Source: Lytechinus pictus (Eukaryota). Taken from it: a stretch of DNA of 64,000 nucleotides. Shown one piece after another: positions 269 through 61,342 of this stretch; positions within the stretch are counted from its first letter, which is position 1, and the number at the start of each line of letters is the position of its first letter. The stretch is from positions 27,962,001 to 28,026,000 of the forward strand of contig NC_087245.1 of assembly GCF_037042905.1 (NCBI RefSeq), written 5' to 3'. The translations under genes and the position numbers were made by a program. The notes under the pieces are model-generated. The model was given only the letters and a program-made list of their open reading frames with translations, did no database searches and was not told the DNA's origin.

Positions 269-404
269 GCAAGCGTTCTTATTGTCGAAGGAGGTGCCAA
301 GGTATATGGGAAGAACCTGGTTCTAGAAAGTGTAAATATGACTGTGGATGATGGTGGTTACATAGACGTCAGTGATGGAGGACATCTTGCTCAACAAGGA
401 CAGG
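269..404 (+). CDS. Exon 1 in window (ASVLIVEGGAKV...GHLAQQGQ)
   Basis: tag|GCA...CAG G|gttag; phase 0 to 1. Confidence 0.85.
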
Positions 405-3400
405 GTTAGAATTCCTTTAATTTCTGATTGTAGGATTGAGTAGGGAAGATAATATATGACAATTATTCTTGTGTATATACTCATATTTTGGTTTTTATGT
501 ACTTTGCCTATTTCCATTACAATTGAATTTCAGAATTTTAGGGATCATACTTTTTTAAAAAAATTGGAAGCATCCCAAAGGGAAGATAGGGTATATGGTT
601 TGGATTGAATTGTAAACATAAATGCACGTGAACAGGTACTTGTGAATTACTTGACAACAGATCAAAATTTATTGTACGATTCAATACAACATTTGAAGCA
701 CAGTATGTAAATCAATTTTTAATAAATTCGAAATAATTTCCACTTTTATCATTTATTCAATGAATGTTAAACTGAGCTGAACTTCTATTCGTGCAATACA
801 TTTACCATGCTGTATTATGAAATACAATGTAATTCATTAATTAATTGAATTAATTTTTATCAAGAGAAATTTAAATCTCATTTAAAAAAACCTATTGCTA
901 CATGTATCTGAAAACCGACCTAATCTACATTTCAATTTATGTTTTTGTATTATTTGTACTGTGTATGCTTGTACCTGTCTTAAAAATTCTTGTTCCAAAT
1001 TGGTGCAATGTCATTGCAGGTGCAGGGATAAGTCATCGCCTCGGTGGCAGTGGGGCATCTCATGCTGGTCTTGGTGGTAGAGGGGGGTGTCAGGGGTATG
1101 TCACATGCACCCTTCCCAAGAATCTTCCTTATGGTAACCTCTACAATCCAAGGGACTTTGGCAGTGGTGGGGGTGGAGCAAGAGGTGGTATCGGTAAGTA
1201 GATATGTTCCCTTTCGTAAATTAACTTTCCCCTAATACTAATAGTGCATGTTATCATGGTTATGACGTTTTTAGGGGGCTGTACACAGATGTTTCCGAGC
1301 AGGCAGGTGGGCTGACTTATAAAAACAATAAATGTATTCATATTAATGAAGAAAAAAAAGGATGAATAAGTCAACTTCTGCGCAGAATTTACTTACCACA
1401 TCACTACTGCATGAAATAAAAAGTGAAGAAGTAGGTTGACACAATGACATCATAGAATCATGATTCAAACATCGTTCACTATATCAACTTTTTTTAAAAA
1501 CATGATTCTGTACCAATGTCCCTTTTTGTGATTTGAGACACATTAACTTTTGATTAAACGCAACCATGATTCTGCGAAACCATCTTTCAAAACGTTTTTC
1601 AAGTCATCATTCTAGCTGAAAAGTCGTGATTGAACGCAGCCAAGTTTGAAATAAGATTTCAATTACAAAATGTTCATATGTTATTATGTACTGTGTAAAA
1701 ACCTCTAGGTGGGGGAACTCTGCAGATTCAAGTAGATGATGTTCTTCAAGTAGATGGTACTATAATGGCTGATAGTCTTGATCTAGCCCTGACCTCATCT
1801 GGATCCGATAGCTCTGGCGGCAGTGGAGGAAGCATCCTAATTGAGTCAGGAGCTTTTATTGGTGAGCAAAAACTGTCAATTTCTCCAAAGAAATTGCCTT
1901 CTTCTACTTCTGTTGTACATGTACATGTAGGTCATTATTAAGCAATGCAACATATTTATTCATTACAGTTGCCTTTGGGTTTAATAAGGTATAGGAATTG
2001 AATTATTTTCTGTATGAATATATCCCATTTCTGCCATGGGTATGAAACGAGTGGGCAGGTTTTTACTCCCAAGGGCGGTTTTCCAGCTATTTACCACATT
2101 GGGAGTCCATAATACTTGGCAAATTGTGATGAATTATGCATGCTGCAAGTTAGATCTGTAGTACCTTGGTGGAAAGTTACCAATGTAGATAGATGCTTAA
2201 TGGATTAATAGAGAATTTAAGCATGATTTGTTGGGCCTTTATGCTCAGTGGATTTTGATTTGAACACTCTATTAATTCAAATGAGGATTTTTCACACATT
2301 GAATTGGTTGTATCTTATTATCTCCTATGATCATTCTTTCAGGTGGACACACAGGTTCAATACAGGCATTGGGCGGTGCTGCAAAGTACACCAACGGTGG
2401 GAGCGGTGCCGGAGGCCGCATAGCTATATACCACCAAACAAATGTTACCCATGGAGAATACCGAGGCTCACTGAGGACGGAGGGTGGTCCAGTAGGCATG
2501 GGTGGTGCTGAGGCAGGAGCAGCTGGTACTGTGTACATCAAGCACCTTGATACAGGGTTCTCTGTGCTCAAGGTCGACAACGGTGGTAGGAAGCCAATCA
2601 CCAAGGAGATTGAAAATGTTGGTACACGGCTTAATTTGGCCGGTGGAACTCGGTCCAAGTCTTCAGTCTACACAGCTACCTCTGGTGTCAGAGTCTCTTC
2701 AAGTGGACCAACCTATGATCCTTATCCGTAAGCTGATTAACTTGAAATCTTTGCCAGATTCATTTATATAAAACAAAGGTGTTTTTTACATCTTGAAAGA
2801 AATTGATATATTTAAATAAATCATATCCCAGCTTCTAATTTTGTTAATGTTTTTTCCCCCTTTAACTTTGATGCAGAACAATCTGTTCTGTATGAAACAG
2901 GGATATTTCTTGTGGGGTGTATGCTGCAATTATACAGTTGTGTTATATAATAAAGGTACCAACAATATAAAGTTGTAGATAAAATGCCCTTTTCATTACA
3001 TGAGGAGTAGATTGTTTTTACAGTTTTTTAAAGATAGCAGTTAATAGTCTTACATATTATTCATATTCCTGAAAACATAAATGTGATCTTTTGTGGCTTA
3101 TTTAAAAAAAGAGAATGAATATTTTTATATATTTATGACAATTGCAAAAAGAAAGAATACAATTATGAGTTGCACTTTACGACTGGACATACACATTCCA
3201 TGATCATAATTTTTTATTCAAGAATTGCATCGTGACCATTCAAGCAGTTTTTTTTTTAGGTAGCAAAGGGGGTATCAGCCATCCTCCCCCCTTGAGCCCC
3301 AATTTTTTCAGGGTGATAATTTTAGTGGAATATGTGTACATATGTCCTTCTATTAGTACTTTAATTATTGGCATTGCAATATCCACAGATGATGAATTGC

Positions 3401-6392
3401 TTCTGTCTACCTGGATAATAATGATGAATTTCTTTTATTTTGTTTACAATAGCCATCATGATGATTATTACTATCTGGCATACCTCTTTGACCAGTCGTA
3501 TAATGGCGATGCAAGGTCATACTACAGAAGCAGCTATCACAGTGTGGTCTTGACCTTTGACCTTGGAGAAATCTTCTTTCTGAATGTAATCAGAGTTCAT
3601 GTCCAATGTAATGCTCTTACAAAGTTCAGGGTAAGTGACTGTACTAGAAAACATGTAGCCCTAGAGTAGGGTAGACAGTATTGAAATAAGGTATACCAAA
3701 CATTTTCAGTCTTATTTAGAGAAGATCTTTTGAATTAATAGAAAAAGAAAATCAGAGGTTATGACAAAATCTTAAATTCATTGTTGAATTGATTTTCCAA
3801 AGGAGGGAAATGATTTGAAAACACATCCATGCAATTTTACAAAATTCGGGTATTGCTTATTCAGTATGAAGAGATACAGTAAACCTCTCATGTTGGAAGC
3901 AAATTTAACAATGTTACTTCATCCCTTTGCCATTGAATAATTCCCAGAACTTTTTCATGATTGAATGATGAATGTTTTCATTGTCTCCTATTGGTTTCAG
4001 GTGGAGTCTTCTTTAGGAGGTACCATCCTGCCAATAACTACAGACTATGTCCTTCCTCCAAACCCATGCCGTGGGTCTGGCCCTTATCTGGAACTGTCCG
4101 TTAAACGAAGGGCCGACACTATCAAATTCCATTTGACTTCCACTCAATCAAGTTCTGTGACTTACAGTGATGCTGCATTGTCAGAAATCGAGATCTTTAT
4201 TGATGAATCTCATGTGCACTCCAGGTAAAGAATTATACATGCATTGTCTTTAAAAAGATTGATTGTATATATTTATATACAGTATACATGATTTAGTTGT
4301 GTTATAATGATGAATATGACTTCTTGGAAGATTATCATACAGCTTGGGAAATAATTTTCAGACTATACCATAAGGGATTTTAGACACTTTGTCAAAAGTC
4401 AGAGCTTCTTCTTTTCCACAGGAAACCCACAAGCCACAAGTTATTCATTACCAGTCCTCAAATATTTGAAAGATGAGAGTCAGTCCTACTAGACCTGGGG
4501 CCCGTTTCATAGAGGACTTGCAACTATTGAAACTTTGCCATTATGGCAACTACCAGGAAATCTTGATTATGATTGGCTGCTGAGCCCTGTTACCATAGTA
4601 GTTGCCATTATGGCAAAGTTACAACAGTTGCAAGTCCTTTATGAAACGGGGCCCCAGAATATCTGAATATCATTTTATCCGTAATATAATCCTTCACCTA
4701 TCGGTAGAAGTACATGCAGTTCTTGATACCTACATGTACCCAAGTGTCATACTGTATGTACACCCATTCCTTACCGTAGGTATGAACACAGAGGACTAGA
4801 CAGTGCAAGGACCTGGATTGAACCTGCTGGAACCAGTTCTCACCAGTTTGATGAGGTTTATATACTTGGAGGTGCACACCTGGCTTTCATGCCACTAGAT
4901 TACAACCTTACTGAGCCGGTTTCAGTTCAAGTTGGCCAGCTGTATGGGGATACAACTGGTAAGTACATGTATTACCTCTTGTAAGAAACTCAGATGACGA
5001 TACAGTGTATCCTGGAGTTGCCAAAGATTGGTTCTTACTATCATGTAGAGATGTTGAATCAGTCCTGGCAGTCTACAGAAGAGACATGTAAAATAAGTCC
5101 TGAAAGCTCACACACACCAGCAGGAAAAGTCTTACATATTTTCACGACAGCTTTCTTTCACAATGATTAAACTTACACCGAAGTCACACAATTGTGTAGA
5201 TACTAATGTATATACCTGACCTGCTGAATACTGATTCTCCTTCCATACTGGAACCAGATATCTTCTTTGAATAAAATATAGGAATAACAGAACTCAGAAG
5301 TGAACATATTTGATGAAGAGACTGAAGTAATCTTAATTATTTGTTTTGTAAAGGGGAAACGAATGTTGTTCACCTTTTCAGGTGAAGAGTTCAATTATTG
5401 TACTGTAAATAATTGCAAGTTTGCAGTTCAATTCTTGCTTTTCAGCTAACCACTGGTGTTGAAAAATGTATATTAGGCTGGTTTAATTAGAGAGTCCATT
5501 TTCATCAAATCCTGCCTGATCTGAGAGTATCAGAGATGTCTTTAATAAACAGTTTCAAAACATTTCCTGGCATTTTTTATTCAGTAATATATTTAACTAC
5601 ATGTACATTATTGTGATTTTATCTTGCCTTATCTTATTTGACTACATTTTGTTTTATTCTAATATAGACAACTTTACTTAGACATCCTTGAACACCATTC
5701 CTATATTTGCCAATGCTCAATTCAAATTCCTTCATTTTATCTTTATACTGGCATATGTTTTCTCATGATGCCTTTCTTGTTACCTTATTTTCTTTCTCAG
5801 TATTTGAATTCAAATTTTAAAATGAATTGAATCCTCTAAATCCATGTATGATCAATCTGATCTGTATTGAATGAAATCCATGACTTCTGTTCTCTGTTTC
5901 CAGGCTATATTCACCTTGGTTTCAAGCAGTCCATGTCTATCAACATCACTCATCCTGATATCTCCTTCAATACAAGGGTCTATGAGGAAGGAAGACTGGT
6001 GATGCCTTCTAGGGCATTCTTCAAAGGAGTTGAGCTTATTTCTTCAGGAAATGTTAGTCCACTCTCTTAAAANNNNNNNNNNNNNNNNNNNNNNNNNNNN
6101 NNNNNNNNNNNNNNNNNNNNNNNNNNNNNNNNNNNNNNNNNNNNNNNNNNNNNNNNNNNNNNNNNNNNNNNNNNNNNNNNNNNNNNNNNNNNNNNNNNNN
6201 NNNNNNNNNNNNNNNNNNNNNNNNNNNNNNNNNNNNNNNNNNNNNNNNNNNNNNNNNNNNNNNNNNNNNNNNNNNNNNNNNNNNNNNNNNNNNNNNNNNN
6301 NNNNNNNNNNNNNNNNNNNNNNNNTACTGCTACTACTACCAATACTGCTACCAATACTACTACCACTACTACTACCACTACTACTACCACTA

Positions 6393-6437
<45 letters not shown>

Positions 6438-45400: not shown

Positions 45401-48400
45401 TACAACAGGTATATATTACTTCAAGAATGATGTAATACTTTTCATAGTATATGGCTGTAAACTTCAGTATTTATTTTATAAACTTCAGTACTTGATATAT
45501 TAAAAATAATGACTTGTTTGCTTTTTAATTCCGATATCTTGTATGCCTTCTTTCTCTGTGATCATTCTGGCTGTGATTGCATTTTGAACACTAAATTTGT
45601 TTATGATTTGAAAGAAACTATTTGGATCATATCTTTCAGGATCATCTGGTGGCAGTTTGGGTGGTACAGGAGGACGAACCTTTGACCAGGCCATCCCAGC
45701 CCCACCCCGAGGTTCACTCTTCGATCCTCTTGACTTTGGAAGCTGTGGAGGTCAAAACTCTATTGATCTAGATTCCTTGGGGTATGGTGGTGGAATCATC
45801 AGTCTTACAGCACCTATTCTAGATCTGAATGGAGCAATCCTTGTGGATGGTACATCCTCTAAAGGCGGGCGCAATGGAGGAGGCAGTGGGGGTTCTATCC
45901 TCATTAAAGGTATTTGAATGCCATCCCTTGGTCCCATTTCATCAAGAGATACAAGTGTTGAAGATTTGTCATTATGGCAACTTCCGTGGTCACATGGTCT
46001 ATCAACCAATCATAATCAAGTTTACCATGGTAATTTCCACAATAGCAAGTGCAATAGTTTTAATTTGTATGAAACAGGCCCTTGACGATAACTGTGTGTA
46101 AGGCTATAAAAAACAATCACTATCTCAGTACATTATTCATGTTATTACATGTATATCCATCATTGGAGTAGGTTGTCCTCTGGGAATGGAAATTTAAGTC
46201 AAGTCAAACATTTTATTTGTAGGAAAAGAAATCAAGACAGGAAATATATTGGTATCTGAGTACAAGTGATTTCCTCCATTAAAAAATCTCTATTTAGCAT
46301 TTTGTTAAAAAATGGTATGTAGGCAAAATTTTTTTCATTAAGGGCTTCATGTCTATTCATAATTTTTCAAATGTTGAGGTAGAACTAGCCACTCTTGAAT
46401 TTGAATTTAGTTTCTTCAGTGTAAGGACACGTTGCCATTGGTAGCAGCAGTGGGATGCATAGTATATGGAGGTCAGATAAGCACTAAAACAAACCTTTTT
46501 TTAAGGGTCCAGATACTGTTTAAGAACCTCTTTTCATTTTAAAAAATGTAATGGGACCCACCTACTCTACGCCTTTATGGATTTACAAGAAATATCTCCT
46601 TTTCCCTCTAGTTTCTTCACTACAAGGTCAAGGTTCATTGTCAGCCATTGGTGGCAGCGGTGGGATGCATGGTGGCGGAGGAGGTGGAGGACGAATAGGC
46701 ATCCACTTCAATAACAATACCTTCCATGGTGATCTACAAGCCACTGGAGGTGACAGTGGCTATGAAGTAGGAGGTGCGGGGACTGTTTTGTTCTTCAACA
46801 GAGCTTCCGATGAAAAGACATTGATGATTGACAATTCTTTCAAGACTCCTGGTCCACTTGCAAGTTCTACGGATTATGATATTACTGGGAGTGAAGAGAG
46901 TTGCCGCTCTTGGCTTCTACCTGCGTTTGATGGCGATGATTATGTTTTTGATGAGTTGGTCCTGAGGGGAAGAGCCCATTTAGCTATAGCTGGTGGTGAT
47001 CATCCCAGCATGAATACTACTGTGAGAATTAGGAAGACTTCAGGGGATGCTTCAGGGATCTTCCATGTGGGTCCACATCAGGTGAGTTGCTCTTGTATAC
47101 AGTCAAGTTTGAGGTGATCAAAGTTTTGCTTGCCTCCTGGGACCAATTACTCACAGTAAAACTTAATTATTTTATACCTCAAAAAGTATGTATTTACATT
47201 TCGAATGTGTATATGTACATGTATGCTGAAAAAAAGAAGGTTTGGTTGTCCCAATTAACTGCTTTAGTATATTATTATGGTGAATAGATTAAGACATGTC
47301 CTCAAGGTCAATTGAGATTTTTTTACAGATGAAAACATTTGGATATTAATGCTTTCGTAGTTGAGTGCCTTTCACACTAAGTAAAATGTTGTCTTCTGTA
47401 TGTACTTAAGTAAATAAATTTCTCTCTCAAGGATCTCAACATTGACCTTCCATCTGAACACCCACGTGTTGCTTGGGGTGTGCTCCTCAACCCTTATGGT
47501 GACCTTGAAATGCCTGCTGACCTTGAAGTCCATGGAGTAACCTTTGAACTTGAAGGGCAACTACATAATGTTCGAAACCTCATCATTGGCCATGGTGGTG
47601 TAGTAAACATGAGGTGAATAATTATTGTTAATCCATGTTAAATCAATTAAAATGGTGTTTTACATGTAACTTAAAGTTTAATCTATACAGTTTTGCAGAT
47701 TAGAATATTTCAATATCGATGCTGCTACTCAAAGGTTTGCAAATTGGTAGGCTACTTGGTTTTAGTTTTGATAAAATGGATACAATTAGTTATGACAAGA
47801 CAACTTCACTGTGTCCCCTCATGATGAATTGATGCTAGCTGTTTTACTGTATGTCACTGAAGTTAAATGTTAAATTGAGAATCAGTATTGGCCTTTTGCA
47901 TCATCAAGAAGCTATTGTGCTCTTTCTGTTGAAGTGAAAGAAATTTCAGTATATTTGAAGCAATGTCTACCTTTGAGCAATATACCAATGTGAGGCACAA
48001 GTTATACCAGACACTTAATGATAATGGTTAATCAAGTGATAATTTTTTCAATGTATTCCATGGGGATTAAAAGAAAATATTAGTAGTAGTTGATAATATT
48101 TCATGTCTTATGACTATTCAATGCTAATAATATGCAACATTTATATAATGATTAATGTCTGTGCAGAATGTTGCTAAGTGTTGCATACTATTACCCCAGT
48201 TTTAAGCATGTCTACATGTTGCATATCTGACATTCCAAATCAAAACTGAAGTCACAAACTGAAAATTATTTAAAACCAATATCATACTTGAAAATTTATG
48301 TCTCGTTTTTGATCTTCAACTATTTACCAGACCATACACAAATAGCACTGCAGGAATATCACACGCTCTACACTATGACTCGATCATAATCAGAGGTGGA

Positions 48401-51400
48401 GGCAAACTAGTTGTGGAAGGTGGAGAAAAAGGCTTCAATCTCCATGGAAACACCCTCATTGTTGAGAGCGGTGGTATTCTTGAGGCAGACCACCTTGCTT
48501 TAGTGGTGGATGATCTTGTCGTAGAGGAATTGGCAGTGATTGATTTGAATCACATTGTAAGTTCGTGAATTTCAAGTGAAACTGTAATTGAACAAGATTC
48601 TTGTGTTGAGCATCCTAACCAGTTGCTTTGTTCCCAATCAGGGCGTTGTTTATTTTATGGATCTTTTCAGTGTTTACCTATTCATGTTTTGTCCATAATG
48701 TTATGAAGTAATTTCTAATTGCATAAACTATAATGACATTACTAAATTGTTAGTATGCTTGGAGAAGCCTGTGCATAACTCCTTGTCAAGGTTGACATAG
48801 AATGTGGTGTGTTTAGGTAGCCGGCAGATTGCCCTAATAGGATAAACAAACTTCCCTCTAGTACAAATTATGAGGAATGGCGATGTGACCTATATAAGCC
48901 ATTAGTGCTATATTGAAAAGATTTTTTCTGTTCAAAGATAAACTGCTCTTAGAAATGTATGAAGTATTAATAAAAATGGTATCTATAAAGTCTGATATAA
49001 TATAAAATATTATGAAGTATCGTTGGGAAGAAAGTAAGAATTGCAATGATAATGGGTCCTGGATATGGTTTGAAAAAAAAAAAATTGCACCCAGCATGAC
49101 TCTATTCTTATTTTTTCTGTTGTATCCTTACCTTTTATAATGCATTGTTTGTTGAATTATATTGATAAGCAATATATATTTACATAATTAAACGGTTTTT
49201 TAATCATGTATTAAGGTCTCCAAATAAAGTGAGATAGGTTTTATAGCATAATGTACAACAGTAATGAATGTTTTATTTCTCTCAGTCACAGTTTACTGAG
49301 GGTCAAGGGTCAGAGGTCACTGGGGCAGGTCATGGAGGCTTCGGAGGAGGCAGTGAAGATCATCCTGGAGGAATCGCATATGGAGATGCATTCCGCCCAT
49401 CTCACTTTGGCAGCATTGGTGGTAGTGATGATGTAATGGGAGGTGGAATACTACATGTAGATGCAAGAAACAACATACAAATAGATGGTGAGATCAGGGC
49501 TTCTGGTATCGTAATCTTTTATTTTTACTGCATGTTTTACAAACTGAATTCTCTTTTAGAGTGTAGCAATCACCTGAAACAAGAGTTATAAACTGCAAAT
49601 ATATACAGACATTCTATAGATAATTGTGCAGGAGTGTACAAGATAGCATCTGGGATACCATGAAGCTTTCGTCAGTCCATAGTCTGAGCTTGGGACAATG
49701 CAAGCCCCTATGTAGACAAAATTTAACAGGTGCATTAGAAGTACATGTATGTTTGCAAGTCATGTTTTAATATCTTGAAATGGTGTAAAATTTAATCATG
49801 TATTACCTCACTGTAGAAGTAATTAATGGAAAAAATCATTTTGTATTTATAATATGTTAACATTGAATGTCACAGAGGAGAATATTCATTGGTGTTTGGA
49901 ACACAATAGTTCAAGAACAAAAAGTTTAATTATCCAATCAATTTCCTTTCAGGATGGGCATAATTGTATATTGGTACATAAAATAATATGATTTCAATGG
50001 CAATAGCCATCAGGTATGTCAGAACCATATTAATTTATGCAAGCCTTACTTTGGTGGCAGTGGTGGGATTGTACACTCAACTGTTATGAGGTCTTCCTTT
50101 ATGTAGAAATTATGCAGTATTTGAGTAAATTGCAGATTAGATCTTGCTCCATCTTTAACTTTGAAGGGGAATTTCAATTGTGACTGAATAATATAAACAT
50201 TAAATATCTGCATGAAGTAAGGCAAGCTTAGATGAGTCAGAAATAAAAACAAAATAAGCAATGTGAATTAAACAAGTACTTATGTGACCTTAGGCACTGT
50301 CAGGTGTGATGGAGAAAGGGGCATGGATAGAGCTGAAGGAGGAGCCAGCGGAGGGAGCATTCTCCTTGAAACAAGAATCTTTACAGGATCAGGAAGTATC
50401 CAGGCAAATGGAGGGAGAGGTAAGTATTTCAACCAAAAAAATCATTATGAGATGGATTTCCATGTGTTTTACACATTTTTTAAAGATATTTGATTTAATT
50501 TGATAATGAAGAATCAAGAAGAGACAACAGCATAATTAGAACAATGTACAGAGATATGGATCCTTGTTCTTATTGTGAAGTCATCTTTATTTAAAAGGGG
50601 TATGGTTTGGTAATAGTGAATTTATTTGTAAAGGACCTTTAATTAATGAATAAATGAAAACATGAAAAAATGTTATCTTTACTCAGGCTTTGGAACAGTC
50701 GGAGCAGGAGGAGCAGGAGGAAGGATTGCTGTCTATTACACCGAACACTCATTTGTTGGTCAAATGGTAGCATATGGAGGAGTGGGATCTAATCTGAAGA
50801 ATGGAGCAGCAGGGACAGTATACCAAGAATCCAGGAATCCATTGTCTGTCCATAGAACTCTTCTTGTGGACAATAATGGCCTTCAGGTTCCTGATGTAAG
50901 TACCCTTAATCAGTTCACTCAGAATGCTTTTGATGTCAAGTCATGTGTAGTGCTCATGTGAATTGTTTAACGTGTAGATGTTTTTTTTAAGTGTAAGGTT
51001 ATTATTGTAGTTGCAAGTTTTCGTGAACACTCAAAGAATGTGCATATTCTAATATGATATTTAGAATGATTAAGTAACCTCAATGAAGAGACTGATTACC
51101 TCTAAGGAAGTTTTTGATAGGATACAATGTGATCTTACTTTTTGTATGTGGAAAATGTGGATCGTAGAATTATTCCGTTTGAGTGACACTTGCCCTTTGC
51201 CTGTGTCTCTTTCCAGACTATGATTACTGATTACAACAATCTCCAGACTGTTGGAACAAAGACCTGGTTCCCGGCAACTGCCAACAACATGGAGTTTGAC
51301 GAACTAACCCTGCTTGGAAATGCCCATCTTGCATTTGAAGCCATTGAAAGTTTGACATTGATTGTTGCCAAAGTCATTGGTCCTTCAGTCCATGAAGGTT

Positions 51401-53821
51401 CCTTTGGGACACTCCACATTGGACTATACCAGTCGTTTCAACTGAATGAAGTTGACATTATTCTGCCATTCAACCTGAAGCTCTACCATGATGCTACTCT
51501 CACAATCCTCCCACCTGGTGTCACCTTTCAGTCAAGCCAGAACTTCATCAATGGGAGGGTAATTGGCGGTGGAGATGTAACGGTCATTGATGCAGAGTTG
51601 TCTTACGGTCAGCATGCAAGGTCTGGAAATACTCCAGAAGCTACGATTGTACTGCATTCATTACAGATCAGATATGGTGGAATCGTATCATTCCTAGATG
51701 GTATTGAAGAGTACACTATTAGGGCTGGAACTGTTAATCTGTCTCCTGGAGGTATTCTGAGAGGAAGAGCTTTGCTAATGGAAGATGTGGACACACTAAC
51801 TATTGAGGAAACCGCCATTCTGACAGTAGATCATGCTAATCCTTTCTCTCAGAATACTGGTAAGCAGTCAAATCATGTCTCATTAGCTTATAATGCTGAA
51901 ATACATGTAGAAGTTTGCTTTGTTCCTTTATAGTTTTTCATATTGACAGAATATGAGGCTCCACTTTTCTTACAAGGAATTTGTTCACAAACAGAAATTA
52001 TTGATGATAGTATTAGCTGGATTTATAAAGTTTTTTTTTTAAATGCCATGATTATTACCCCATATTAGCTGTGCTGCCCATTTAGGCGCTCAAGAATTCT
52101 AGGAATTTCTTCCTACCGGGTACCTATTCACCTCACCCGTGTTGAGTACAGCACAATGTGGGTAAATTTCTTGCTGAAGAAAAACACGCCATCGCTGGGA
52201 TCGAACTCACGTCCCTCAGATTGAAAGACGAGAGTTATAACCACTAGATGCATTGACTGCTTACTGTCGCATTTGCACCCAACGATAGCATCATGGTACT
52301 CTTGTTCTGTTACTGTGTTATCTTTAAATAAGTTGGTTTCATTGGGTGTAGATTTTTTCAGACAGTTTTTATATGAAGTTATTTTTATACATCAAGAGAA
52401 ATTTAATCTTTTGTATTTTGGCTTGGCTTAAGTATGATATACGTTCTCTTTTGAATGATTTGAAGAATTTAGGTCTGGCTCTGGTGGAAGCCTTGGTGGG
52501 GAAGGAGGATATGGACACGTCACCAGCACAAGAACATACCCCATCACTGATATCAGCAGTCCAAACCTGTTTGGTGAACCTGGACAATGTCGATGGAACC
52601 CCTGTCTAAATGGAGAGTCCCCAGCTGGAGGTGGGAAGTTACTTATCAAGGCACATACTATCATCAATAGGGGCAACATTAGTGCAAGGTATTCAGAATT
52701 ATATTTCACCTACCTAGAAGCTTTTGGAGGATCATTCAAAAGTCTTTCATGTGATAAAACGGCTTAGCCCATCTTTTATCTGTGAAAAGAAGATTGTTGC
52801 AAAGTAGATCTTAATGTTAAGATTGCGCAAGAGACCGGTCATTCATATATTCTATATTTATCAAAGACTGGTGATGAGTAGTCATGATTAAAGTTTAATG
52901 ATCACTTACAGTTTACTATATTCTGTTTGATAAAAAAACTTAGTACACTTCTCTATGTTGCTATGCAAGTATTTATTTGTTACCATGGATGGTAACATTC
53001 ATATCATGTTAAAGTAAAACTTACAAACAGAATATCTGTAGTTAAATTGATGTGATATGTGTAATAAATTATACATTATTTACAAAAAATACATATCATT
53101 ATCATTGTTGGTTCACTTTGTTTTTCCACAGTGGAGAAGATACTCCCAATAGTATGCAGGCTGGAGGTGGGTCTGGAGGAAGTATCTGGTTAGAGTGCAC
53201 AAATATTGACTCTACTGGTAAGTTAATTATCACACCTCTTCGCCTCTATGGATCATATAAATTGCTTATAAAGAATATGTACTTTATAAGAAGAAGAATG
53301 CATTGAAATTTTAAGTGATGTAATGCATACTTAAGTTTTCATTTTACATGTATGTACATGTATTTGTCATTTAAATTGATACTTTTGTTAATTTCTAAAA
53401 AGATGATGCAACCATTCAAATATTTTACTCAATACATAGACAAGAGTGAATAAAAAGAACTTTTCTCAATTTGGTGCATTAAATTGGATATAGCTAATCA
53501 TATAAAAAGAAATAATGATAACATATTTTGGCATGGTTTGGATAACAATGTTTCCATCCTTCAGTGTGTTGACACATAACTGAGTGAAGTGGGACCAAGA
53601 CGGAATATTTTTTTTATACTGGTCTTTTCATAGGTACCATATCTGCAGCTGGTGGTGTTGGTAGGGAAGGAGGAGGTGGGAGTGGTGGCCTGATCAAGAT
53701 TTCACATGAAGTTGGGTCTATCTCGAAAACACCAAGGTCCTGTGGAGGGCTGGGGCACCAGACAGGAGGTCCAGGACTAGTTATGCTTGAACAGAAACTG
53801 ATTGGAACATATCACAAAATG
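269..53821 (+). CDS. Giant multi-exon gene (partial at both ends): 52 exons, 3,864 aa in window; Gly-rich/beta-solenoid tandem-repeat protein, probably extracellular
   Basis: All 51 introns are GT..AG and exon phases match throughout (sum 11,592 nt, divisible by 3, no internal stop seen). Recurring motifs GA(S/G)HGG, YGxxxxPxxFGS, DGxIxAxG, GGSGGSI, GGGGRIA, GAAGTVY, LxVDN, FDE..GxAH, GD.TG..H.G..Q. Many N-x-S/T sequons. Confidence 0.9.
1020..1193 (+). CDS. Exon 2 (GASHAGLGG...YGNLYNPRDFGSGG; Gly block of unit 1)
   Basis: cag|GT...ATC G|gtaag. Confidence 0.9.
1709..1861 (+). CDS. Exon 3 (GGTLQIQ...DGTIMA...GGSGGSILI)
   Basis: tag|GT...ATT G|gtgag. Confidence 0.9.
2343..2727 (+). CDS. Exon 4 (GAGGRIAIY...GAAGTVY...LKVDN)
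   Basis: cag|GT...TAT CC|gtaag; within ORF 2327-2731. Confidence 0.9.
3453..3630 (+). CDS. Exon 5 (inserted galactose-binding-like domain, LTFDLG)
   Basis: tag|C CAT...TTC AGG|gtaag. Confidence 0.85.
4001..4224 (+). CDS. Exon 6 (...AALSEIEIF...)
   Basis: cag|GTG...TCC AG|gtaaa. Confidence 0.85.
4495..4657. mobile_element. Palindromic MITE (GGG..CCC ends, CWG flanks; PIF/Harbinger-like)
   Basis: ctggggcccgtttcatagaggacttgcaact ... agttgcaagtcctttatgaaacggggccccag; degenerate relatives near 35732-35885 and 45925-46082. Confidence 0.75.
4780..4958 (+). CDS. Exon 7 (RTWI...FDEVYILGGAHLAF...GDTT)
   Basis: tag|G TAT...ACT G|gtaag. Confidence 0.9.
5904..6052 (+). CDS. Exon 8 (YIHLGFKQ...)
   Basis: cag|GC...GGA AAT|gttag. 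Confidence 0.85.
6073..6324. other. Assembly gap (N run)
   Basis: Run of N. Confidence 1.
6325..6705. repeat. (CTA/CCA)n microsatellite, interrupted by N gap 6488-6625
   Basis: tactactac repeats between and after the gaps. Confidence 0.95.
7029..7220 (+). CDS. Exon 9
   Basis: cag|GTT...ATC ACT|gtaag. Confidence 0.85.
8216..8384 (+). CDS. Exon 10
   Basis: cag|GTG...TAT G|gtaag. Confidence 0.85.
8440..9014. mobile_element. Remnant of a TA-flanked Tc1/mariner-type non-autonomous element
   Basis: Right end ttttttgtgggacgcactg|ta; internal inverted pair ~8465 and ~8715; left end not found. Confidence 0.4.
9491..9631 (+). CDS. Exon 11 (GGGHGGSGG...YGSIYDP; unit 2)
   Basis: tag|GT...TAT G|gtaag. 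Confidence 0.9.
10190..10462 (-). mobile_element. tRNA-derived SINE (degenerate)
   Basis: Antisense B-box-like gggtttcaaaccc and head aaccactagaccacaac; similar copies ~21700-22008 and ~52050-52248. Confidence 0.7.
10511..10666 (+). CDS. Exon 12 (GGRGGGALK...DGIISANG)
   Basis: cag|GT...GCA G|gtatg. Confidence 0.9.
11190..11363 (+). CDS. Exon 13 (GGSGGSVW...GAGGRVAI)
   Basis: tag|GA...GGA G|gtaag. Confidence 0.9.
11992..12733. mobile_element. piggyBac-like non-autonomous element, truncated at one end; inverted relative of 62826-63575
   Basis: Ends ...ttttaggg|ttaa; body is reverse-complement similar to 62826-63575. Confidence 0.75.
12806..13056 (+). CDS. Exon 14 (GGAGTVYL...TWL...FDE)
   Basis: tag|GC...GAC GAG|gtgag. 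Confidence 0.9.
13089..13575. mobile_element. TIR MITE (TGTGAC ends), copy 1
   Basis: tgtgacctgccacccccaaaaccaacaataagtcg ... cgacttattggtggttttggggtggtagtacaca; homologous to 36103-36552. Confidence 0.75.
13969..14147 (+). CDS. Exon 15 (IHLHGNAHVA...GDRSAVIHIG)
   Basis: tag|ATT...TAT AG|gtaaa. Confidence 0.9.
14599..14800 (+). CDS. Exon 16
   Basis: cag|A TAT...GTG AAG|gtaaa. Confidence 0.85.
15577..15703 (+). CDS. Exon 17
   Basis: tag|ATG...TCA G|gtatg. Confidence 0.85.
16144..16371 (+). CDS. Exon 18 (GSGAGHGGRGG; unit 3)
   Basis: cag|GA...GCA G|gtgag. Confidence 0.9.
16688..16852 (+). CDS. Exon 19 (EGLLHANG...GGGSGGSLLL)
   Basis: cag|GT...AGC G|gtaag. Confidence 0.9.
16878..17178. mobile_element. 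MITE with TTAA target duplication and AGG..CCT ends (Kolobok-like)
   Basis: ttaa|aggtcaagtccacccc ... ggggtggacttgtcct|ttaa. Confidence 0.8.
17265..19350. mobile_element. ~2.1 kb non-autonomous DNA transposon, TA-flanked (Tc1/mariner-like), no ORF
   Basis: TIR cacaacaaaaaaagtaagtccccc / gggggacttacttttttgttgtg, with ta on both sides. Confidence 0.8.
18838..19003. mobile_element. Poly-G/poly-C MITE nested in the 2.1-kb element, 5-bp direct repeat CAATA
   Basis: caata|caggggccggggaag ... cttccgcggcccgtg|caata. Confidence 0.75.
19610..20087 (+). CDS. Exon 20 (GSGGRGAIY...GAAGTFY...LVADN; start of second inserted domain)
   Basis: cag|CC...AGT GG|gtaag. Confidence 0.9.
20613..20757 (+). CDS. 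Exon 21
   Basis: cag|T TGG...ATT AGG|gtagg. Confidence 0.8.
21309..21473 (+). CDS. Exon 22 (...ASLRNVEIL...)
   Basis: cag|TTT...GAC AAG|gtaat. Confidence 0.8.
21700..22008 (-). mobile_element. tRNA-derived SINE (degenerate) with upstream (TAA)n tail
   Basis: ggtacccatttacctcacctggg core, gggattcaaact B-box-like, (aat)n 21662-21735. Confidence 0.65.
22068..22299 (+). CDS. Exon 23 (GDHTGQI..GQ)
   Basis: cag|ATC...TAT G|gtaaa. Confidence 0.85.
22762..23815. mobile_element. TTAA-flanked long-TIR element (Kolobok-like) carrying a nested MITE
   Basis: ttaa.aggg.ggttcaccct ... aggatgaacttttcct|ttaa; ~100-bp imperfect inverted arms. Confidence 0.6.
22971..23583. mobile_element. Nested MITE (CCGTA ends) with repeated tactagtattcaacc motifs
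   Basis: accgtatgggtactagtattcaacccg ... cgggttgaatactagtgcccttacggt; motif present five times across both orientations. Confidence 0.75.
23902..24092 (+). CDS. Exon 24
   Basis: Weak aaag|GT acceptor required by phase; GCC CAG|gttag. Confidence 0.7.
25019..25189. mobile_element. Palindromic MITE with CTG target duplication (PIF/Harbinger-like)
   Basis: ctg|gtgggtgtttcataaagctgttcgtaagttaagag ... ctcttaacttacgaacagctttatgaaacggcccc|ctg. Confidence 0.8.
25278..25383 (+). CDS. Exon 25
   Basis: cag|ATG...GAT G|gtagg. Confidence 0.75.
25900..26139 (+). CDS. Exon 26 (GAGHGSNGG...YGSFMTPDTFGS; unit 4)
   Basis: tag|GA...TCA G|gtaaa. Confidence 0.9.
26156..26518 (-). mobile_element. Full-length tRNA-derived SINE, same family as 60978-61342
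   Basis: Reverse complement of the 60978 copy (head, core and AT-rich tail). Confidence 0.9.
26658..30667. mobile_element. 4.0-kb fold-back non-autonomous DNA transposon (TAG..CTA ends, 3-bp TAA duplication; Academ-like)
   Basis: taa|tagtagaccggccaaaa ... ttttggccggtctacta|taa; >1-kb inverted arms built from a ~623-bp tandem unit (gcatcccagctaaaagtcttgc at 26726 and 27349). Confidence 0.8.
28096..28330. mobile_element. hAT-type MITE with 8-bp target duplication, nested in the fold-back element
   Basis: catagaaa|cagtagcgtaccta ... taggtacgctagtg|catagaaa; truncated relative begins at 29151. Confidence 0.85.
31130..31315 (+). CDS. Exon 27 (GGGSGGSIWI...GAGGRVAVY)
   Basis: cag|GT...TCA G|gtaaa. 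Confidence 0.9.
31717..32346 (+). CDS. Exon 28 (GGPGTVYL...DELHVYGGAEVA...GDRTG)
   Basis: tag|GT...GGA G|gtgag; overlaps ORF 31740-32402. Confidence 0.9.
32856..33001 (+). CDS. Exon 29
   Basis: cag|GG...TTA CAG|gttag. Confidence 0.85.
33977..34088 (+). CDS. Exon 30
   Basis: tag|GTT...GCA G|gtatc. Confidence 0.85.
34670..35290 (-). mobile_element. L2/CR1-group LINE 3' fragment with (CATA)n tail
   Basis: ORF 35049-35315 encodes YGDKAF...PKLWNKL...FKSLLKTHLF, a typical ORF2 C-terminus. Confidence 0.75.
35386..35681 (+). CDS. Exon 31 (GASHGGEGG...GGASGGSI; unit 5)
   Basis: tag|AA (NAGNAG, alternative start 35389)...TCG|gtaag. Confidence 0.9.
36103..36552. mobile_element. TIR MITE (TGTGAC ends), copy 2
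   Basis: tgtgacctgctaccccaaaaaccaacaa ... ttgttggtttgggggtggctggtcaca. Confidence 0.75.
36594..36806 (+). CDS. Exon 32 (GGGGRMALY...GASGTVY)
   Basis: cag|GCA...TCA CAG|gtaca. Confidence 0.9.
37857..38120 (+). CDS. Exon 33
   Basis: cag|GTC...TAC CAG|gtatg. Confidence 0.85.
38430..38739 (+). CDS. Exon 34
   Basis: cag|GAT...ACA G|gttgg. Confidence 0.85.
39565..39797 (+). CDS. Exon 35 (GASHGGRGG; unit 6)
   Basis: cag|CA...GGT CAG|gtgag. Confidence 0.9.
41084..41234 (+). CDS. Exon 36 (GGGIIKL...DGEILASGG...GASGGSI)
   Basis: tag|ACG...ACA G|gtaaa. Confidence 0.9.
41510..41765 (+). mobile_element. L2/CR1-group LINE 3' fragment
   Basis: Translates to GYGDRAFSSIAPRIWNSLPSSLR...LKAHLF; tail gcgcaatataaat. 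Confidence 0.75.
41953..42164 (+). CDS. Exon 37 (furin-like Cys-rich insert)
   Basis: cag|GG...ATC AAG|gtagg; CVPHCSSCDPERRCLQC...CVDDC...HC. Confidence 0.85.
42800..43283 (+). CDS. Exon 38 (GSGGRIAI...LIVDN...GDGTGLVHI)
   Basis: cag|GAA...AAA G|gtaat. Confidence 0.9.
43834..43943 (+). CDS. Exon 39
   Basis: tag|CT...ACC AAG|gtatg. Confidence 0.85.
44519..44695 (+). CDS. Exon 40
   Basis: cag|GGA...CTA AAG|gtagg. Confidence 0.85.
45285..45408 (+). CDS. Exon 41
   Basis: cag|GGA...ACA G|gtata. Confidence 0.85.
45640..45909 (+). CDS. Exon 42 (GGSLGGTGG...PLDFGS...GGGSGGSI; unit 7)
   Basis: cag|GA...AAA G|gtatt. Confidence 0.9.
46612..47081 (+). CDS. Exon 43 (GGGGRIGI...GGAGTV...FDELVLRGRAHLA)
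   Basis: tag|TT...CAT CAG|gtgag. Confidence 0.9.
47432..47613 (+). CDS. Exon 44
   Basis: aag|GAT...ATG AG|gtgaa. Confidence 0.85.
48331..48556 (+). CDS. Exon 45
   Basis: cag|A CCA...CAC ATT|gtaag. Confidence 0.85.
49286..49487 (+). CDS. Exon 46 (GAGHGGFGG; unit 8)
   Basis: cag|TCA...GAT G|gtgag (possible alternative donor after 49505). Confidence 0.85.
50294..50419 (+). CDS. Exon 47 (GGASGGSILL)
   Basis: tag|GC...AGA G|gtaag. Confidence 0.9.
50687..50895 (+). CDS. Exon 48 (GAGGRIAVY...GAAGTVY...LLVDN)
   Basis: cag|GC...CCT GAT|gtaag. Confidence 0.9.
51217..51859 (+). CDS. Exon 49 (KTWF...FDELTLLGNAHLAF...)
   Basis: cag|ACT...ACT G|gtaag; within ORF 51190-51933. Confidence 0.9.
52050..52248 (-). 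mobile_element. tRNA-derived SINE fragment
   Basis: Similar to 10190-10462; gggatcgaactc B-box-like. Confidence 0.65.
52466..52688 (+). CDS. Exon 50 (GSGGSLGGEGG; unit 9)
   Basis: Phase requires the gaag|AA acceptor rather than ttag ending at 52472; GCA AG|gtatt. Confidence 0.75.
53132..53217 (+). CDS. Exon 51 (GGGSGGSIWL)
   Basis: cag|T GGA...ACT G|gtaag. Confidence 0.9.
53634..53821 (+). CDS. Exon 52, last exon found (GGGSGGLIKI...GGPGLV); gene open downstream
   Basis: tag|GT...AAA ATG|gtaag. Confidence 0.85.
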
Positions 53822-54255
53822 GTAAGTGCACATTTTCTGGATCTTGATTTGGATTGTTACAACTCAACACTCGTGGGGAGTTGGGTAGGTGTGTGCAAAG
53901 ATTTCCTATCTTTGCAGGTATTGAGTTCCATTCTATCAGTATTTTGAGGATGATTGAGTGTTTGAAAAAAATATTTCCTGGAGCCAATTACAATATACAC
54001 TACTCAAAAAAAGTTAAGGACCACTTTTTAAAACGTACATAAAGATTTTATACAAGGTGTTTTATTTCTGGAAATACCTCAGTACAACTGTCCTAAATGT
54101 CCTTAAACACGCTGTAATCAATTTCACGCATGGGTGGTTTCAGTTGTTGCATAATGTCTCTCGCATCACTGCACATCCTGAAAAGTGGGCCCCGAGGGGT
54201 ATCAGCTACCGACATGAAGTGGTAAAAACGAATGTCTGAGTGTCTTTCAGGCAGT

Positions 54256-54787
54256 TCAGTAACGAGTGTGACCACCTCCTGCAGCAATAACGGCTTCACA
54301 GCGCTGTCTCATGGAGCTGATGAGGCGATTGATGTCTCTGACGTCCAGTGCATCCCATGCAGCCTCCAGAGCCACACCCAGCTGCTGCAGTCCAAGTGGA
54401 TGGGCTTCGAGCTGCTCGAGACTCCTCCCCATCATGTCCCAGACGTGCTCTATCGGGTTTAAGTCCGGGGACCTCGCTGGCCACTCCATACGCTCAATCC
54501 CCTGGCCCTCAAGGAACTCGGTCACCACCCTAGCTCGGTGGGCACGGGCATTGTCATCCATGAAAATGATGTTTTGTCCCACATTTTCTGCAAATGGCAC
54601 CACTATAGGTTCAAGGACCTCATCCCTGTACCTCACTCCTGTCATTGCTCCCCCTGGGACCACGTAGAGACGAGTACGGTTGGCGTAGGTGATGCCTCCC
54701 CACACCATGACGCTGCCTCCCCCATAACGGTCATGTTCTGCAATACAGGGGTCTGCAAATCTCTCTCCTGGTCGCCTCCAGACTCTC
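54256..54787 (-). pseudogene. Inverted duplicate of the transposase 3' half (intact frame, retains W)
   Basis: ORF 54256-54708 (-) reads ...PIEHVWDMMG...GGHTRY. Confidence 0.9.
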
Positions 54788-54981
54788 TACAATCAACAAA
54801 TTGCTGACAACAGCAATACCAAGATACAGCTGTCCAGGATGCCATCAAACACAATGAAATCAATTTCACACATGCAGTTCTTTCATGTCTCTTGCATCAT
54901 TGCAATGTGCCCGTACAAAAGTGGCTTCCAAAGCATTTTCTGTCTTTAGTCTGTACAATCAACAACTTGCCTACAACAGCA

Positions 54982-60100: not shown

Positions 60101-60157
60101 GAATGGGCTACCCTGTCAAAATATCAGAAATAAATAAATAAATAAAAATAAATAAAA
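57128..60157 (+). mobile_element. 5'-truncated CR1/L2-group (Crack/Daphne-like) LINE: partial APE endonuclease + reverse transcriptase, 3' UTR and (AAAT)n tail
   Basis: YRPP, ILGDFN, SDH (endonuclease); NYRPIS, DLRKAFDTV, GVPQGSILGP, YADDT (RT); one in-frame TGA at 59520-59522, frame continues to 59801; tail aaataaataaataaat. Confidence 0.92.
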
Positions 60158-60977: not shown

Positions 60978-61342
60978 GTGGAAGCGTCGTGGTGTAGCGG
61001 TTCTGACTCTCGCCTTGTAATCAGAGGGTCGTGTGTTCGAATCCCACCATGGCCTAGCGTCCTTTGGCAAGGCGTTAATCCACACTTTGCCACTCTCCAC
61101 CCAGGTGTTAAATGGGTACCCGGTAGGATGTGAAAGCCTATATGTAGTATGCCTAGCAATTGAGTCTTGGAACTCTTGTTGGAATGCTCCCCAGGGAGTG
61201 GAGAAGGTGCATACATTGTATGCGGGCATGCAAGGATCCGATGACCGGGGTAATAATACATGTATGTCTGTAAAGCGCTTAGAGACGTCGTTCCGATGTA
61301 TTAAGCGCTATATAAATGCGGAATATTATTATTATTATTATT
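60978..61342 (+). mobile_element. Full-length tRNA-derived SINE (SINE2)
   Basis: A-box gtggtgtagcgg, B-box gttcgaatcc, core ccacccaggtgttaaatgggtacc, LINE-like tail aagcgctatataaat..(att)n. Confidence 0.92.

What the first reader, a model, noticed from the sequence alone, without database searches (positions are those of the whole stretch)
269..53821. Giant uncharacterised tandem-repeat protein (>3,864 aa): nine Gly-rich/beta-solenoid units
Seen: 52 exons splice into one intact frame. The G(A/G)(S/G)(H/L)GG motif recurs in exons 2, 11, 18, 26, 31, 35, 42, 46 and 50, about 390-600 aa apart. It is followed in a fixed order by YGxxxxPxxFGS, DGxIxAxG, GGSGGSI, GGGGRIA, GAAGTVY, LxVDN, then TW, FDE..GxAH, GD.TG..H.G..Q and LxIxxGG rungs. 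Units are too diverged to align at DNA level, and N-glycosylation sequons are frequent. Established: interleaved GGxGG strands build polyglycine-II bundles, as in the ALK/LTK glycine-rich domain. Inference: a secreted or surface rod-like scaffold (matrix, adhesion or recognition) of a family I cannot name or assign a function to. Both ends lie outside the window, so the full protein is larger.
Basis: partly seen in the sequence, partly recalled or inferred. Interest (0 to 1): 0.75.

Follow-up and report, generated by a model that had tools for sequence, protein, structure and literature searches.

The report
Giant beta-helix repeat surface protein gene
The window holds nine of about 31 tandem 415-residue beta-helix units of a giant, transcribed gene for what is probably a membrane-anchored cell-surface protein, in a probable sea urchin; the family is widespread but has never been characterised.

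Summary
On the + strand only, exon-sized open stretches match a ~415-aa unit profile in strict cyclic order. Nine units start inside the window. A minimal 43-exon chain gives 3,339 aa without a stop. Contigs of one public run show seven GT..AG splice joints, which join eight exons into one open 809-aa frame. Both assembly gaps lie inside one intron (6053-7028) whose flanking exons abut in frame and in the unit profile.

The gene is much larger than the window. About 31 units run from -42.6 kb to +106 kb. They continue, partly within single exons, into teneurin-type EGF arrays, then EGF-VWD-LamG cassettes, one transmembrane helix and a ~100-aa tail ending near +142 kb. That would total roughly 20,000 aa if it is one gene.

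The unit has no Pfam, NCBIfam or PDB sequence match, yet 2,426 cluster representatives carry it. They include hemichordates, amphioxus, echinoderms, a mollusc, a sea anemone and a choanoflagellate. Proteins with bacterial surface domains carry only the Gly-rich module.

The beta-solenoid reading is supported. The polyglycine-II/ALK analogy is not. Function is inferred only.

The parts
269..404 (+). Last exon piece of the preceding unit (profile positions 353-393). That unit begins upstream of the window at about -1426.
1026..8384 (+). Unit 1. Exons at about 1026-1193, 1709-1930, 2343-2727, 4780-4958, 5904-6052, 7029-7220 and 8216-8384. The last exon also carries the GPGxG start of unit 2.
   Evidence: Collinear profile hits 3-54, 56-107, 104-181, 185-232, 223-287, 287-357 and 355-391. 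The last two are weak on their own (E 0.74 and 4.8). In-frame GT..AG pairs. The junction 2727/4780 is the weakest, and an extra exon is possible there.
6053..7028 (+). Intron that contains both assembly gaps (6073-6324 and 6488-6625).
   Evidence: Donor GTTAGT at 6053 in phase 0. Acceptor ...TTTTTTCCAG, with the next exon starting at 7029 in phase 0. Profile positions abut at 287/287.
9491..15745 (+). Unit 2. Exons at about 9491-9631, 10511-10666, 11190-11363, 12806-13056, 13969-14147, 14599-14800 and 15637-15745.
16144..24105 (+). Unit 3. Exons at about 16144-16371, 16688-16852, 19610-19987, 22075-22299 and 23920-24105. Extra coding sequence is likely after the LxVDN motif (19837-20088) and at profile positions 286-327.
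25900..34088 (+). Unit 4. Exons at about 25900-26139, 31130-31315, 31717-32346 and 34023-34088. It includes a 5-kb intron full of repeats, and profile positions 304-359 were not located.
35386..38739 (+). Unit 5. Exons at about 35386-35681, 36594-36806, 37857-38120 and 38430-38739.
39565..43943 (+). Unit 6. Exons at about 39565-39797, 41084-41234, 42810-43283 and 43834-43943. The last third of the unit (profile 305-393) was not located. The junction 41234/42810 is weak.
45615..48556 (+). Unit 7. Exons 45615-45909, 46612-47081, 47432-47613 and 48331-48556.
   Evidence: The junctions between these exons and on to unit 8 appear as GT..AG joints in run X1 contigs, and the frame is open. The start at 45615 is predicted only. 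A protein in the public collection (P0020) matches the exon at 46605-47108 at 77% identity.
49286..51859 (+). Unit 8. Exons 49286-49487, 50294-50419, 50687-50895 and 51217-51859.
   Evidence: The junctions up to 51217 appear in run X1 contigs. The 3' end at 51859 is predicted only.
52466..53821 (+). First 170 profile positions of unit 9. Exons at about 52466-52688, 53132-53217 and 53634-53821. The unit resumes at 68342, outside the window.
   Evidence: Donor ATG|GTAAGT at 53822 in phase 0. Acceptor, with the exon starting at 68342 in phase 0. Profile 105-170, then 173-374.
53822..64000 (+). First 10 kb of a 14.5-kb intron. It carries a Tc1-type transposase ORF (54808-55824) and a LINE endonuclease/reverse-transcriptase ORF (57048-59519).
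   Evidence: Pfam hits. Intron limits.

Best explanation
The window is the middle of one very large + strand gene. The gene spans from about -43 kb to +142 kb relative to the window, about 185 kb in all. It probably encodes a type I transmembrane cell-surface protein of roughly 20,000 residues.

Domain order:
- About 31 tandem units of ~415 aa make up most of the ectodomain. The first unit carries an inserted discoidin-like segment.
- A long array of teneurin/tenascin-type EGF domains follows.
- Repeated EGF-VWD-LamG cassettes come next.
- One transmembrane helix and a ~100-aa cytoplasmic tail end the protein.

Each unit is predicted to fold as a right-handed beta-helix. A 165-175-aa Gly-rich module supplies three to four long rungs, and the GGxGG runs lie between the modelled strands. 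About 230 aa of short three-strand rungs follow.

Inferred mechanism: the units form a long, stiff, glycosylated stalk, about 0.2 micrometre long if they stack end to end. The stalk holds binding surfaces far from the membrane. It would act as an adhesion or pericellular-coat scaffold, as beta-helix adhesins do in bacteria. The VWD, EGF and LamG part near the membrane would mediate matrix contacts or multimerisation.

Shown here: the unit layout, splicing in one 6-kb stretch, the fold prediction, the domain order and the family's distribution. Inferred only: that it is a single gene over the whole span, the rod geometry and the function.
For: Unit layout:
- The unit profile hits the + strand only, in cyclic order, about 31 times over 150 kb. 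This is the only locus matched in the genome.
- One 2,072-aa exon holds five clean units.

Transcription: seven GT..AG joints seen in public contigs give one open frame.

Links between the parts:
- One 1,114-aa open stretch holds the last units followed by EGF_TEN/EGF_Teneurin domains.
- Later open stretches join EGF, VWD and Laminin_G_3.
- The last one (2,183 aa) ends with a hydrophobic helix, a tail and a stop codon.
- The Ptychodera homologue P0028 also joins units to EGF_TEN.
- The Saccoglossus homologue P0001 has the same N-terminal order: Gly module, F5/8C, ~520-aa region, then units. Only the ~520-aa region matches significantly (E 7e-14). The Gly-module and F5/8C matches are weak (E 0.04 and 0.3).

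Fold:
- AlphaFold2 gives pLDDT 92.8 and pTM 0.89 for a unit, and 96.2 and 0.90 for the Gly module. Both models are all-beta.

Conservation: proteins from other genomes match single exons at 72-77% identity, while units within the protein share only 25-51%. Each unit is therefore conserved individually.

Glycosylation: sequons are enriched and cysteines are few, 17 in 3,339 aa.
Against: - Transcript evidence covers only 6 kb of the window. The one run is of unknown type and also holds unspliced contigs.
- No signal peptide or first exon was found upstream of -42.6 kb.
- Continuity from the EGF array to the VWD/LamG/TM part rests on same-strand order, and on the first VWD-bearing open stretch beginning with what looks like the last cysteines of an EGF-type module (by eye). 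It does not rest on reads.
- The geometry between units was not modelled.
- No expression site, ligand or phenotype is known for any family member, and literature searches were blank.
Confidence: 0.62

Rival explanations
1. The locus holds two or more adjacent genes rather than one. For example, a secreted beta-helix/EGF protein could be followed by a separate EGF-VWD-LamG transmembrane protein. The repeat array itself could also be split into several transcripts.
For: RNA-type evidence covers only units 7-8. Public gene models of homologues are all much shorter (1,200-6,500 aa) and often end inside units. A 5-kb gap of simple repeats separates the EGF exons from the first VWD exon.
Against: Everything lies on the same strand throughout. 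No internal transmembrane helix was found in the two largest downstream open stretches scanned, and no promoter-like break was looked for. Units, EGF and VWD are joined pairwise inside single open stretches. Contigs of run X1 extend about 1.9 kb and 1.0 kb beyond the stretch laid on, so they probably reach neighbouring units. Short public models are expected for giant repetitive genes.
Confidence: 0.22
2. The Gly-rich modules form polyglycine-II/polyproline-II helix bundles, as in the ALK/LTK glycine-rich domain or the springtail antifreeze proteins, rather than beta-helix rungs. They would then act as ligand-binding or surface-binding faces.
Confidence: 0.08
3. The beta-helix units are catalytic or glycan-processing domains, like the G8 plus beta-helix ectodomains of CEMIP/TMEM2 or polysaccharide lyases and tailspikes. 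The protein would remodel extracellular polysaccharide.
For: Sub-threshold G8 hits occur in homologues and in one window exon. Pectate lyases, tailspike depolymerases and the TMEM2 ectodomain appear among the structural neighbours. An Atlas cluster carrying G8 scores 0.81-0.90.
Against: All G8 scores are below Pfam's cut-off. The best structural neighbours are non-enzymatic adhesin or passenger domains. About 31 tandem copies argue for a structural role. The invariant columns across units are all glycines, and the near-invariant ones are almost all glycines, so no conserved acidic or basic catalytic set is evident.
Confidence: 0.06
4. The array is a decaying or non-functional repeat region (a pseudogene), or an assembly artefact.
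For: There are assembly gaps in the window. TE insertions sit in introns. Some unit thirds were not located (units 4 and 6).
Against: The 43-exon chain has no stops. Spliced contigs exist. Proteins from other genomes match at 72-77% identity while paralogous units share only 25-51%. Both gaps are intronic.
Confidence: 0.02

Closest known systems
Uncharacterised homologues in other holozoans: Saccoglossus kowalevskii LOC144342564 (XP_077861759.1), Ptychodera flava XP_070533134.1, Branchiostoma belcheri KAI8481428.1, Asterias rubens LOC117301055, Apostichopus japonicus 'Tenascin-X', Dreissena polymorpha DPMN_003926, Actinostola QZH41_003345 and Salpingoeca rosetta PTSG_13036
   Same: They share the same ~415-aa unit in tandem, with 27-52% identity to the query unit taken from the downstream 2,072-aa exon. 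The Ptychodera protein also continues into teneurin-type EGFs. The Saccoglossus protein has the same N-terminal order, with an F5/8C insertion.
   Different: All are automatic models of 1,200-4,600 aa with no described function. None shows the whole architecture seen here. The name 'Tenascin-X' comes from the EGF part only.
Bacterial beta-helix adhesins and passenger domains (pertactin, Ag43, Pet, IcsA, HMW1, EtpA, VacA p55, L. reuteri SRRP, tapirins)
   Different: There is no sequence relation (5-12% identity). This protein has no autotransporter barrel or TPS domain. It is eukaryotic, spliced and anchored by a transmembrane helix. Its units are repeated about 31 times and carry a Gly-rich module.
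Large repetitive surface proteins that carry only the Gly-rich ~165-aa module, mostly from metagenomes. Their partner domains are dockerin, Big, fn3 and CarboxypepD_reg (for example P0010, P0015, P0034 and AFDB B8FIE2).
   Same: The Gly-rich module is homologous, with the same motif order GxGHGG, YGS..P..GSGGG, DG.ISA.G, GGGSGGSI, GGGGGRIA and GAGT.
   Different: They lack the second ~230-aa half of the animal unit. The spacing between modules is about 100-300 aa, and the partner domains differ.
Plant glycine-rich proteins of the DUF8003 (PF26010) group, for example AFDB F4JV81 (1,432 aa). From memory this is Arabidopsis At4g32920.
   Same: The predicted Gly-rich module superposes with TM 0.72, 30% identity and E 1e-5. 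An Atlas cluster carrying DUF8003 scores 0.79-0.87.
   Different: PF26010 is not in the local Pfam copy, so HMM membership could not be tested. Their function is also unknown (one search was blank). The overall architecture differs.
ALK/LTK glycine-rich domain (polyglycine-II lattice)
   Same: Both are extracellular, very glycine-rich and have repeated GG runs.
   Different: There is no sequence or structure match in any search. The models show beta-strands rather than a PGII lattice. There is no TNF-like partner domain.

Membership tests
ALK/LTK-type glycine-rich (polyglycine-II) domain | Sequence similarity to the ALK/LTK glycine-rich domain | tested here: not met
   Unit and module profiles against all PDB chains at E <= 1 and E <= 10 return no ALK or LTK chain. 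Pfam gives no family at all at E <= 10.
ALK/LTK-type glycine-rich (polyglycine-II) domain | Lattice of left-handed polyglycine-II helices in the structure | tested here: inconclusive
Right-handed parallel beta-helix fold (pectate-lyase-like / adhesin passenger) | All-beta solenoid of repeated short-strand rungs | tested here: met
   DSSP on the unit model shows about 34 strands and one short helix, with runs of 3-5-residue strands over residues 192-410 and long strands over 60-172. pLDDT is 92.8.
Right-handed parallel beta-helix fold (pectate-lyase-like / adhesin passenger) | Structural superposition on solved beta-helix proteins | tested here: met
Right-handed parallel beta-helix fold (pectate-lyase-like / adhesin passenger) | Sequence membership in a Pfam beta-helix family (Beta_helix, NosD, pectate lyase and similar) | tested here: not met
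   No Pfam hit for the units.
G8 domain (PF10162) | Score above Pfam's gathering threshold of 22.9 bits | tested here: not met
   Scores are 12.3 bits (window 48263-48565), 18.2 bits (P0001) and 20.2 bits (P0005).
DUF8003 (PF26010) / plant glycine-rich protein group | Match to the PF26010 profile | not testable with these tools
   The model is absent from the local library. The only leads are the Atlas scores of 0.79-0.87 and the AFDB structural match to F4JV81 at TM 0.72.
Teneurin/tenascin-type EGF array | Pfam EGF_TEN / EGF_Teneurin above threshold, in the same reading frame as the units | tested here: met
   L009:1231-4572 (window coordinates 105231-108572) scores 219.5 bits for EGF_TEN and 198.9 bits for EGF_Teneurin, after unit profile hits in the same open stretch. 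This lies outside the window.
VWD-containing surface or matrix proteins | VWD domain above threshold | tested here: met
   Three downstream open pieces score 50.6-79.1 bits, and one of them has two matched stretches, so there are at least four VWD domains. No GDPH autocleavage motif is present. This lies outside the window.
Type I membrane protein | N-terminal signal peptide and one C-terminal transmembrane helix | tested here: inconclusive
   A transmembrane helix lies at residues 2054-2085 of the last 2,183-aa open stretch, followed by ~100 aa and a stop. The signal-peptide exon was not found.

The most novel reading that the evidence does not exclude
This may be one of the largest animal proteins, at about 20,000 aa. 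It would be a membrane-anchored rod of about 31 individually conserved beta-helix units. It would represent an ancient holozoan surface-protein family, found from choanoflagellates to deuterostome invertebrates, with no vertebrate or arthropod among the named hits. Its Gly-rich module is shared with proteins that carry bacterial surface domains and with plant proteins. No member has ever been characterised. It would define a new class of eukaryotic beta-helix adhesion or pericellular-coat molecule.
Probability: 0.4. Interest if true: 0.75.

Novelty: new variant of a known kind. Interest (0 to 1): 0.6.

Why it matters
Long beta-helix stalks are a standard design for bacterial adhesins but are hardly known in animal surface proteins. 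Here, an animal gene strings about 31 such units in front of classical metazoan matrix modules (EGF, VWD, LamG) and a membrane anchor.

The unit defines a large family of 2,426 cluster representatives. It has no match in the Pfam copy used here, no solved structure and no literature found.

Naming the domain, solving one unit and locating the protein in sea-urchin embryos or adult tissues would do three things. It would fill a real gap in annotation. It would test whether animals use rigid beta-helix rods for adhesion or as an apical coat. It would also clarify the history of a Gly-rich module shared by bacterial-type surface proteins, plants, protists and animals.

Tried and rejected
- Pfam on 30 window pieces and on whole units, up to E <= 10, gave nothing for the units. 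NCBIfam gave nothing.
- PDB sequence searches with single exons and with two profiles found no relatives.
- Foldseek against the PDB and Swiss-Prot AFDB found nothing at E <= 0.001.
- The PF26010 (DUF8003) lookup failed because the model is not in the local library.
- Literature searches for DUF8003, PTSG_13036, At4g32920 and polyglycine-II/beta-solenoid found nothing relevant.
- The search for a signal-peptide exon between -52 kb and -42.3 kb gave no convincing candidate.
- Extra sequence in units 1 and 3, after the LxVDN motif, looked discoidin-like by eye. Pfam did not confirm it.
- A GDPH autocleavage motif was sought in the VWD regions and is absent.
- Looking up the contig of the C-terminal homologue P0331 gave no DNA and no informative neighbours.
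- A homology search with the C-terminal 2,183-aa piece found only six unnamed proteins.
- The taxon was not tested by me. 'Sea urchin' comes from earlier notes of this scan.

Full report
**1. What is in the window**

The window is AT-rich eukaryotic DNA (GC about 0.35) with two N runs, at 6073-6324 and 6488-6625. Pairwise BLASTP between these stretches gives E-values down to about 2e-8. DNA-level self-comparison finds only repeats outside the modelled exons.

**2. The unit**

A search of the window's own genome showed that the window is G000:C1:27962001-28026000. All 24 matches to a first core profile lie at this one locus, on the + strand, both upstream and downstream of the window. I fetched 200 kb of flanks.

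A single 2,072-aa open stretch downstream (window coordinates 94089-100304) holds five clean units of 412-422 aa. I built a profile from 55 units, four from this exon and 51 from database homologues (alignment A3, 393 positions). It hits the 264-kb region only on the + strand. Successive exon pieces run through positions 1 to 393 again and again.

I count about 31 units between -42.6 kb and +106 kb. Nine of them start in the window, at about 1019, 9496, 16224, 25905, 35400, 39633, 45633, 49307 and 52471.

**3. Frame, splicing and the gaps**

For every neighbouring pair of profile-anchored pieces there is an in-frame GT..AG intron. The minimal chain has 43 exons and 3,339 aa with no stop, and the profile finds nine units plus two partial ends in it. 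Several units have profile gaps: unit 1 after position 181, unit 3 at 190-193 and 286-327, unit 4 at 304-359, and unit 6 after 305. More exons must therefore exist.

One public run (X1, type not recorded, kept as contigs) holds 45% of the sampled words of 45600-51599. Laid on that stretch, its contigs show seven joints with GT..AG ends: 45909/46612, 47081/47432, 47613/48331, 48556/49286, 49487/50294, 50419/50687 and 50895/51217. Two contigs extend 1.9 kb and 1.0 kb beyond the stretch. Joining the exons at these joints gives one open frame of 809 aa, against 43 and 64 stops in the other two frames. My simple splice scoring had ranked all seven first. The run also holds unspliced contigs, so it looks like RNA with some pre-mRNA or DNA.

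Both assembly gaps lie in one intron. The exon 5904-6052 ends at a GTTAGT donor in phase 0. The next exon starts at 7029, after a pyrimidine tract and AG, also in phase 0. The profile positions abut (223-287, then 287-357), and the junction falls inside a conserved unit motif. The hit on exon 7029-7220 is weak on its own (E 0.74). Nothing coding appears to be missing, but the intron's length is unknown.

Unit 9 resumes in frame at 68342, after a 14.5-kb intron with a Tc1-type and a LINE element.

**4. The rest of the gene**

Downstream:
- The open stretch 105231-108572 (1,114 aa) contains the end of the unit array followed directly by teneurin/tenascin-type EGF repeats (EGF_TEN 219 bits).
- More EGF exons follow, up to about 115.8 kb.
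- Open stretches of 2,647, 329, 575 and 2,183 aa then carry EGF, at least four VWD domains and several Laminin_G_3 domains. No GDPH motif is present.
- The last stretch ends with a hydrophobic helix (residues 2054-2085), about 100 further residues and a stop codon.

Upstream:
- The first unit pieces lie at -42588 and -39320.
- The Saccoglossus homologue P0001 starts with a Gly module, an F5/8C domain and a ~520-aa region before its units.
- Only the ~520-aa region matches this locus significantly, at -28716..-26986 (E 7e-14).
- The Gly-module and F5/8C matches, at -39332 and -36761, are weak (E 0.04 and 0.3), but they fall in the same order.

No signal-peptide exon was identified.

If this is one gene, the protein has roughly 20,000 residues. 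That single-gene reading is an inference. It rests on shared strand, on pairwise domain joins within single exons and on partial homologue models.

**5. Fold**

AlphaFold2 with the 55-row alignment gives pLDDT 92.8 and pTM 0.89 for one unit. The Gly-rich module alone, with 94 rows, gives 96.2 and 0.90. Both models are all-beta.
- Residues 60-172 form a few long strands separated by Gly runs.
- Residues 192-410 form many 3-5-residue strands in the rhythm of a beta-helix.
- Residues 1-58 are confident but have no regular strands.

In AlphaFold DB clusters the module matches uncharacterised proteins at TM 0.65-0.83. The entries with uninformative names include A0A2G8L4F5, A0A2G8JC83 and F4JV81. 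Others are annotated with dockerin, DUF11 or DUF2341 domains. No organism names were shown for these rows.

ALK and LTK never appear. I therefore accept 'beta-solenoid' and reject the specific ALK-type PGII reading. A PPII-like element in the first ~58 residues stays open.

**6. Family and distribution**

The exhaustive profile search found 2,426 cluster representatives at E <= 0.001, 764 at <= 1e-10 and 73 at <= 1e-30.

Named members are all 'uncharacterized' or 'hypothetical'. They come from Saccoglossus, Ptychodera, Branchiostoma, Asterias, Apostichopus (auto-named Tenascin-X), Dreissena, Actinostola and the choanoflagellate Salpingoeca rosetta.

A second class of proteins, mostly from metagenomes, carries only the ~165-aa Gly module. 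Those I scanned also carry dockerin, Big, fn3 or CarboxypepD_reg domains, which points to bacterial surface proteins.

The units have no Pfam or NCBIfam match. G8 hits are sub-threshold. The Atlas points weakly to DUF8003, which is absent from the local Pfam copy.

Proteins from other genomes match the 2,072-aa exon at 72% identity end to end, and a window exon at 77%. Units within the protein share 25-51%. There is thus no concerted evolution, and each unit is conserved on its own. Intron positions differ from unit to unit.

**7. Interpretation**

The most likely reading is a giant cell-surface or pericellular protein whose ectodomain is a long beta-helix stalk. With about 13 rungs per unit at 4.8 A per rung, 31 units would span about 0.2 micrometre if stacked. 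This is my estimate and was not modelled. Function is inferred by analogy with beta-helix adhesins and from the EGF, VWD and LamG partners. No experiment or paper bears on it.

Earlier notes of this scan call the genome a probable sea urchin. I did not test that.

**8. Verdict**

The fold class is known. The family and its animal architecture are uncharacterised, so I rate it a new variant of a known kind.

Noticed in passing
window 53822-64000 (the intron continues to 68341): A 14.5-kb intron inside unit 9 carries a Tc1-type transposase ORF (54808-55824, HTH_Tnp_Tc3_2 plus DDE_3) and a LINE ORF (57048-59519, endonuclease plus RVT_1). Both are on the + strand.
   Followed up: partly
window 26699-27671 and 29653-30636: A 984-bp inverted repeat at 92% identity, with further 77-81% direct and inverted copies, fills the 5-kb intron inside unit 4. 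It is probably a foldback or TIR element. A Gly/Pro-rich low-complexity stretch lies between the arms at about 28030-28500.
   Followed up: no
window 13088-13566 vs 36102-36543; 10249-10449 vs 52048-52248; 4498-4653 vs 45930-46081 (inverted): Dispersed repeats of 69-78% identity are shared between introns of different units.
   Followed up: no
whole locus, window coordinates -42.6 kb to +106 kb: Exon structure is very uneven. The window's units are cut into 4-7 exons each, and intron positions differ from unit to unit. Downstream units sit in exons of 678-2,072 aa without introns.
   Followed up: partly
L008:89-6304 (window coordinates 94089-100304) and window 46605-47108: Proteins from other genomes (P0275, P0283, P0020) are 72-77% identical to single exons, whereas neighbouring units in the same protein are only 25-51% identical. 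The units do not homogenise.
   Followed up: partly
window coordinates -39332 to -26986 (L001-L002): The first unit appears to be interrupted by a discoidin (F5/8C)-like segment and followed by a ~550-aa Gly-poor beta-rich region. This is the same order as the N-terminus of the Saccoglossus homologue, though only the Gly-poor region matches it significantly (E 7e-14). The other two matches are weak (E 0.04 and 0.3).
   Followed up: partly
window coordinates 121121-141948 (L010, L016, L017): The membrane-proximal part is a repeated EGF-VWD-LamG cassette with no GDPH motif. A homology search found only six unnamed relatives in the length range 0.55-1.75 times the query, so this part is also poorly known.
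   Followed up: partly
window coordinates 116850-118005 (L010): A long simple repeat lies in the gap between the EGF exons and the first VWD exon. In all three + frames it reads as Phe/Ser/Leu-rich open stretches.
   Followed up: no
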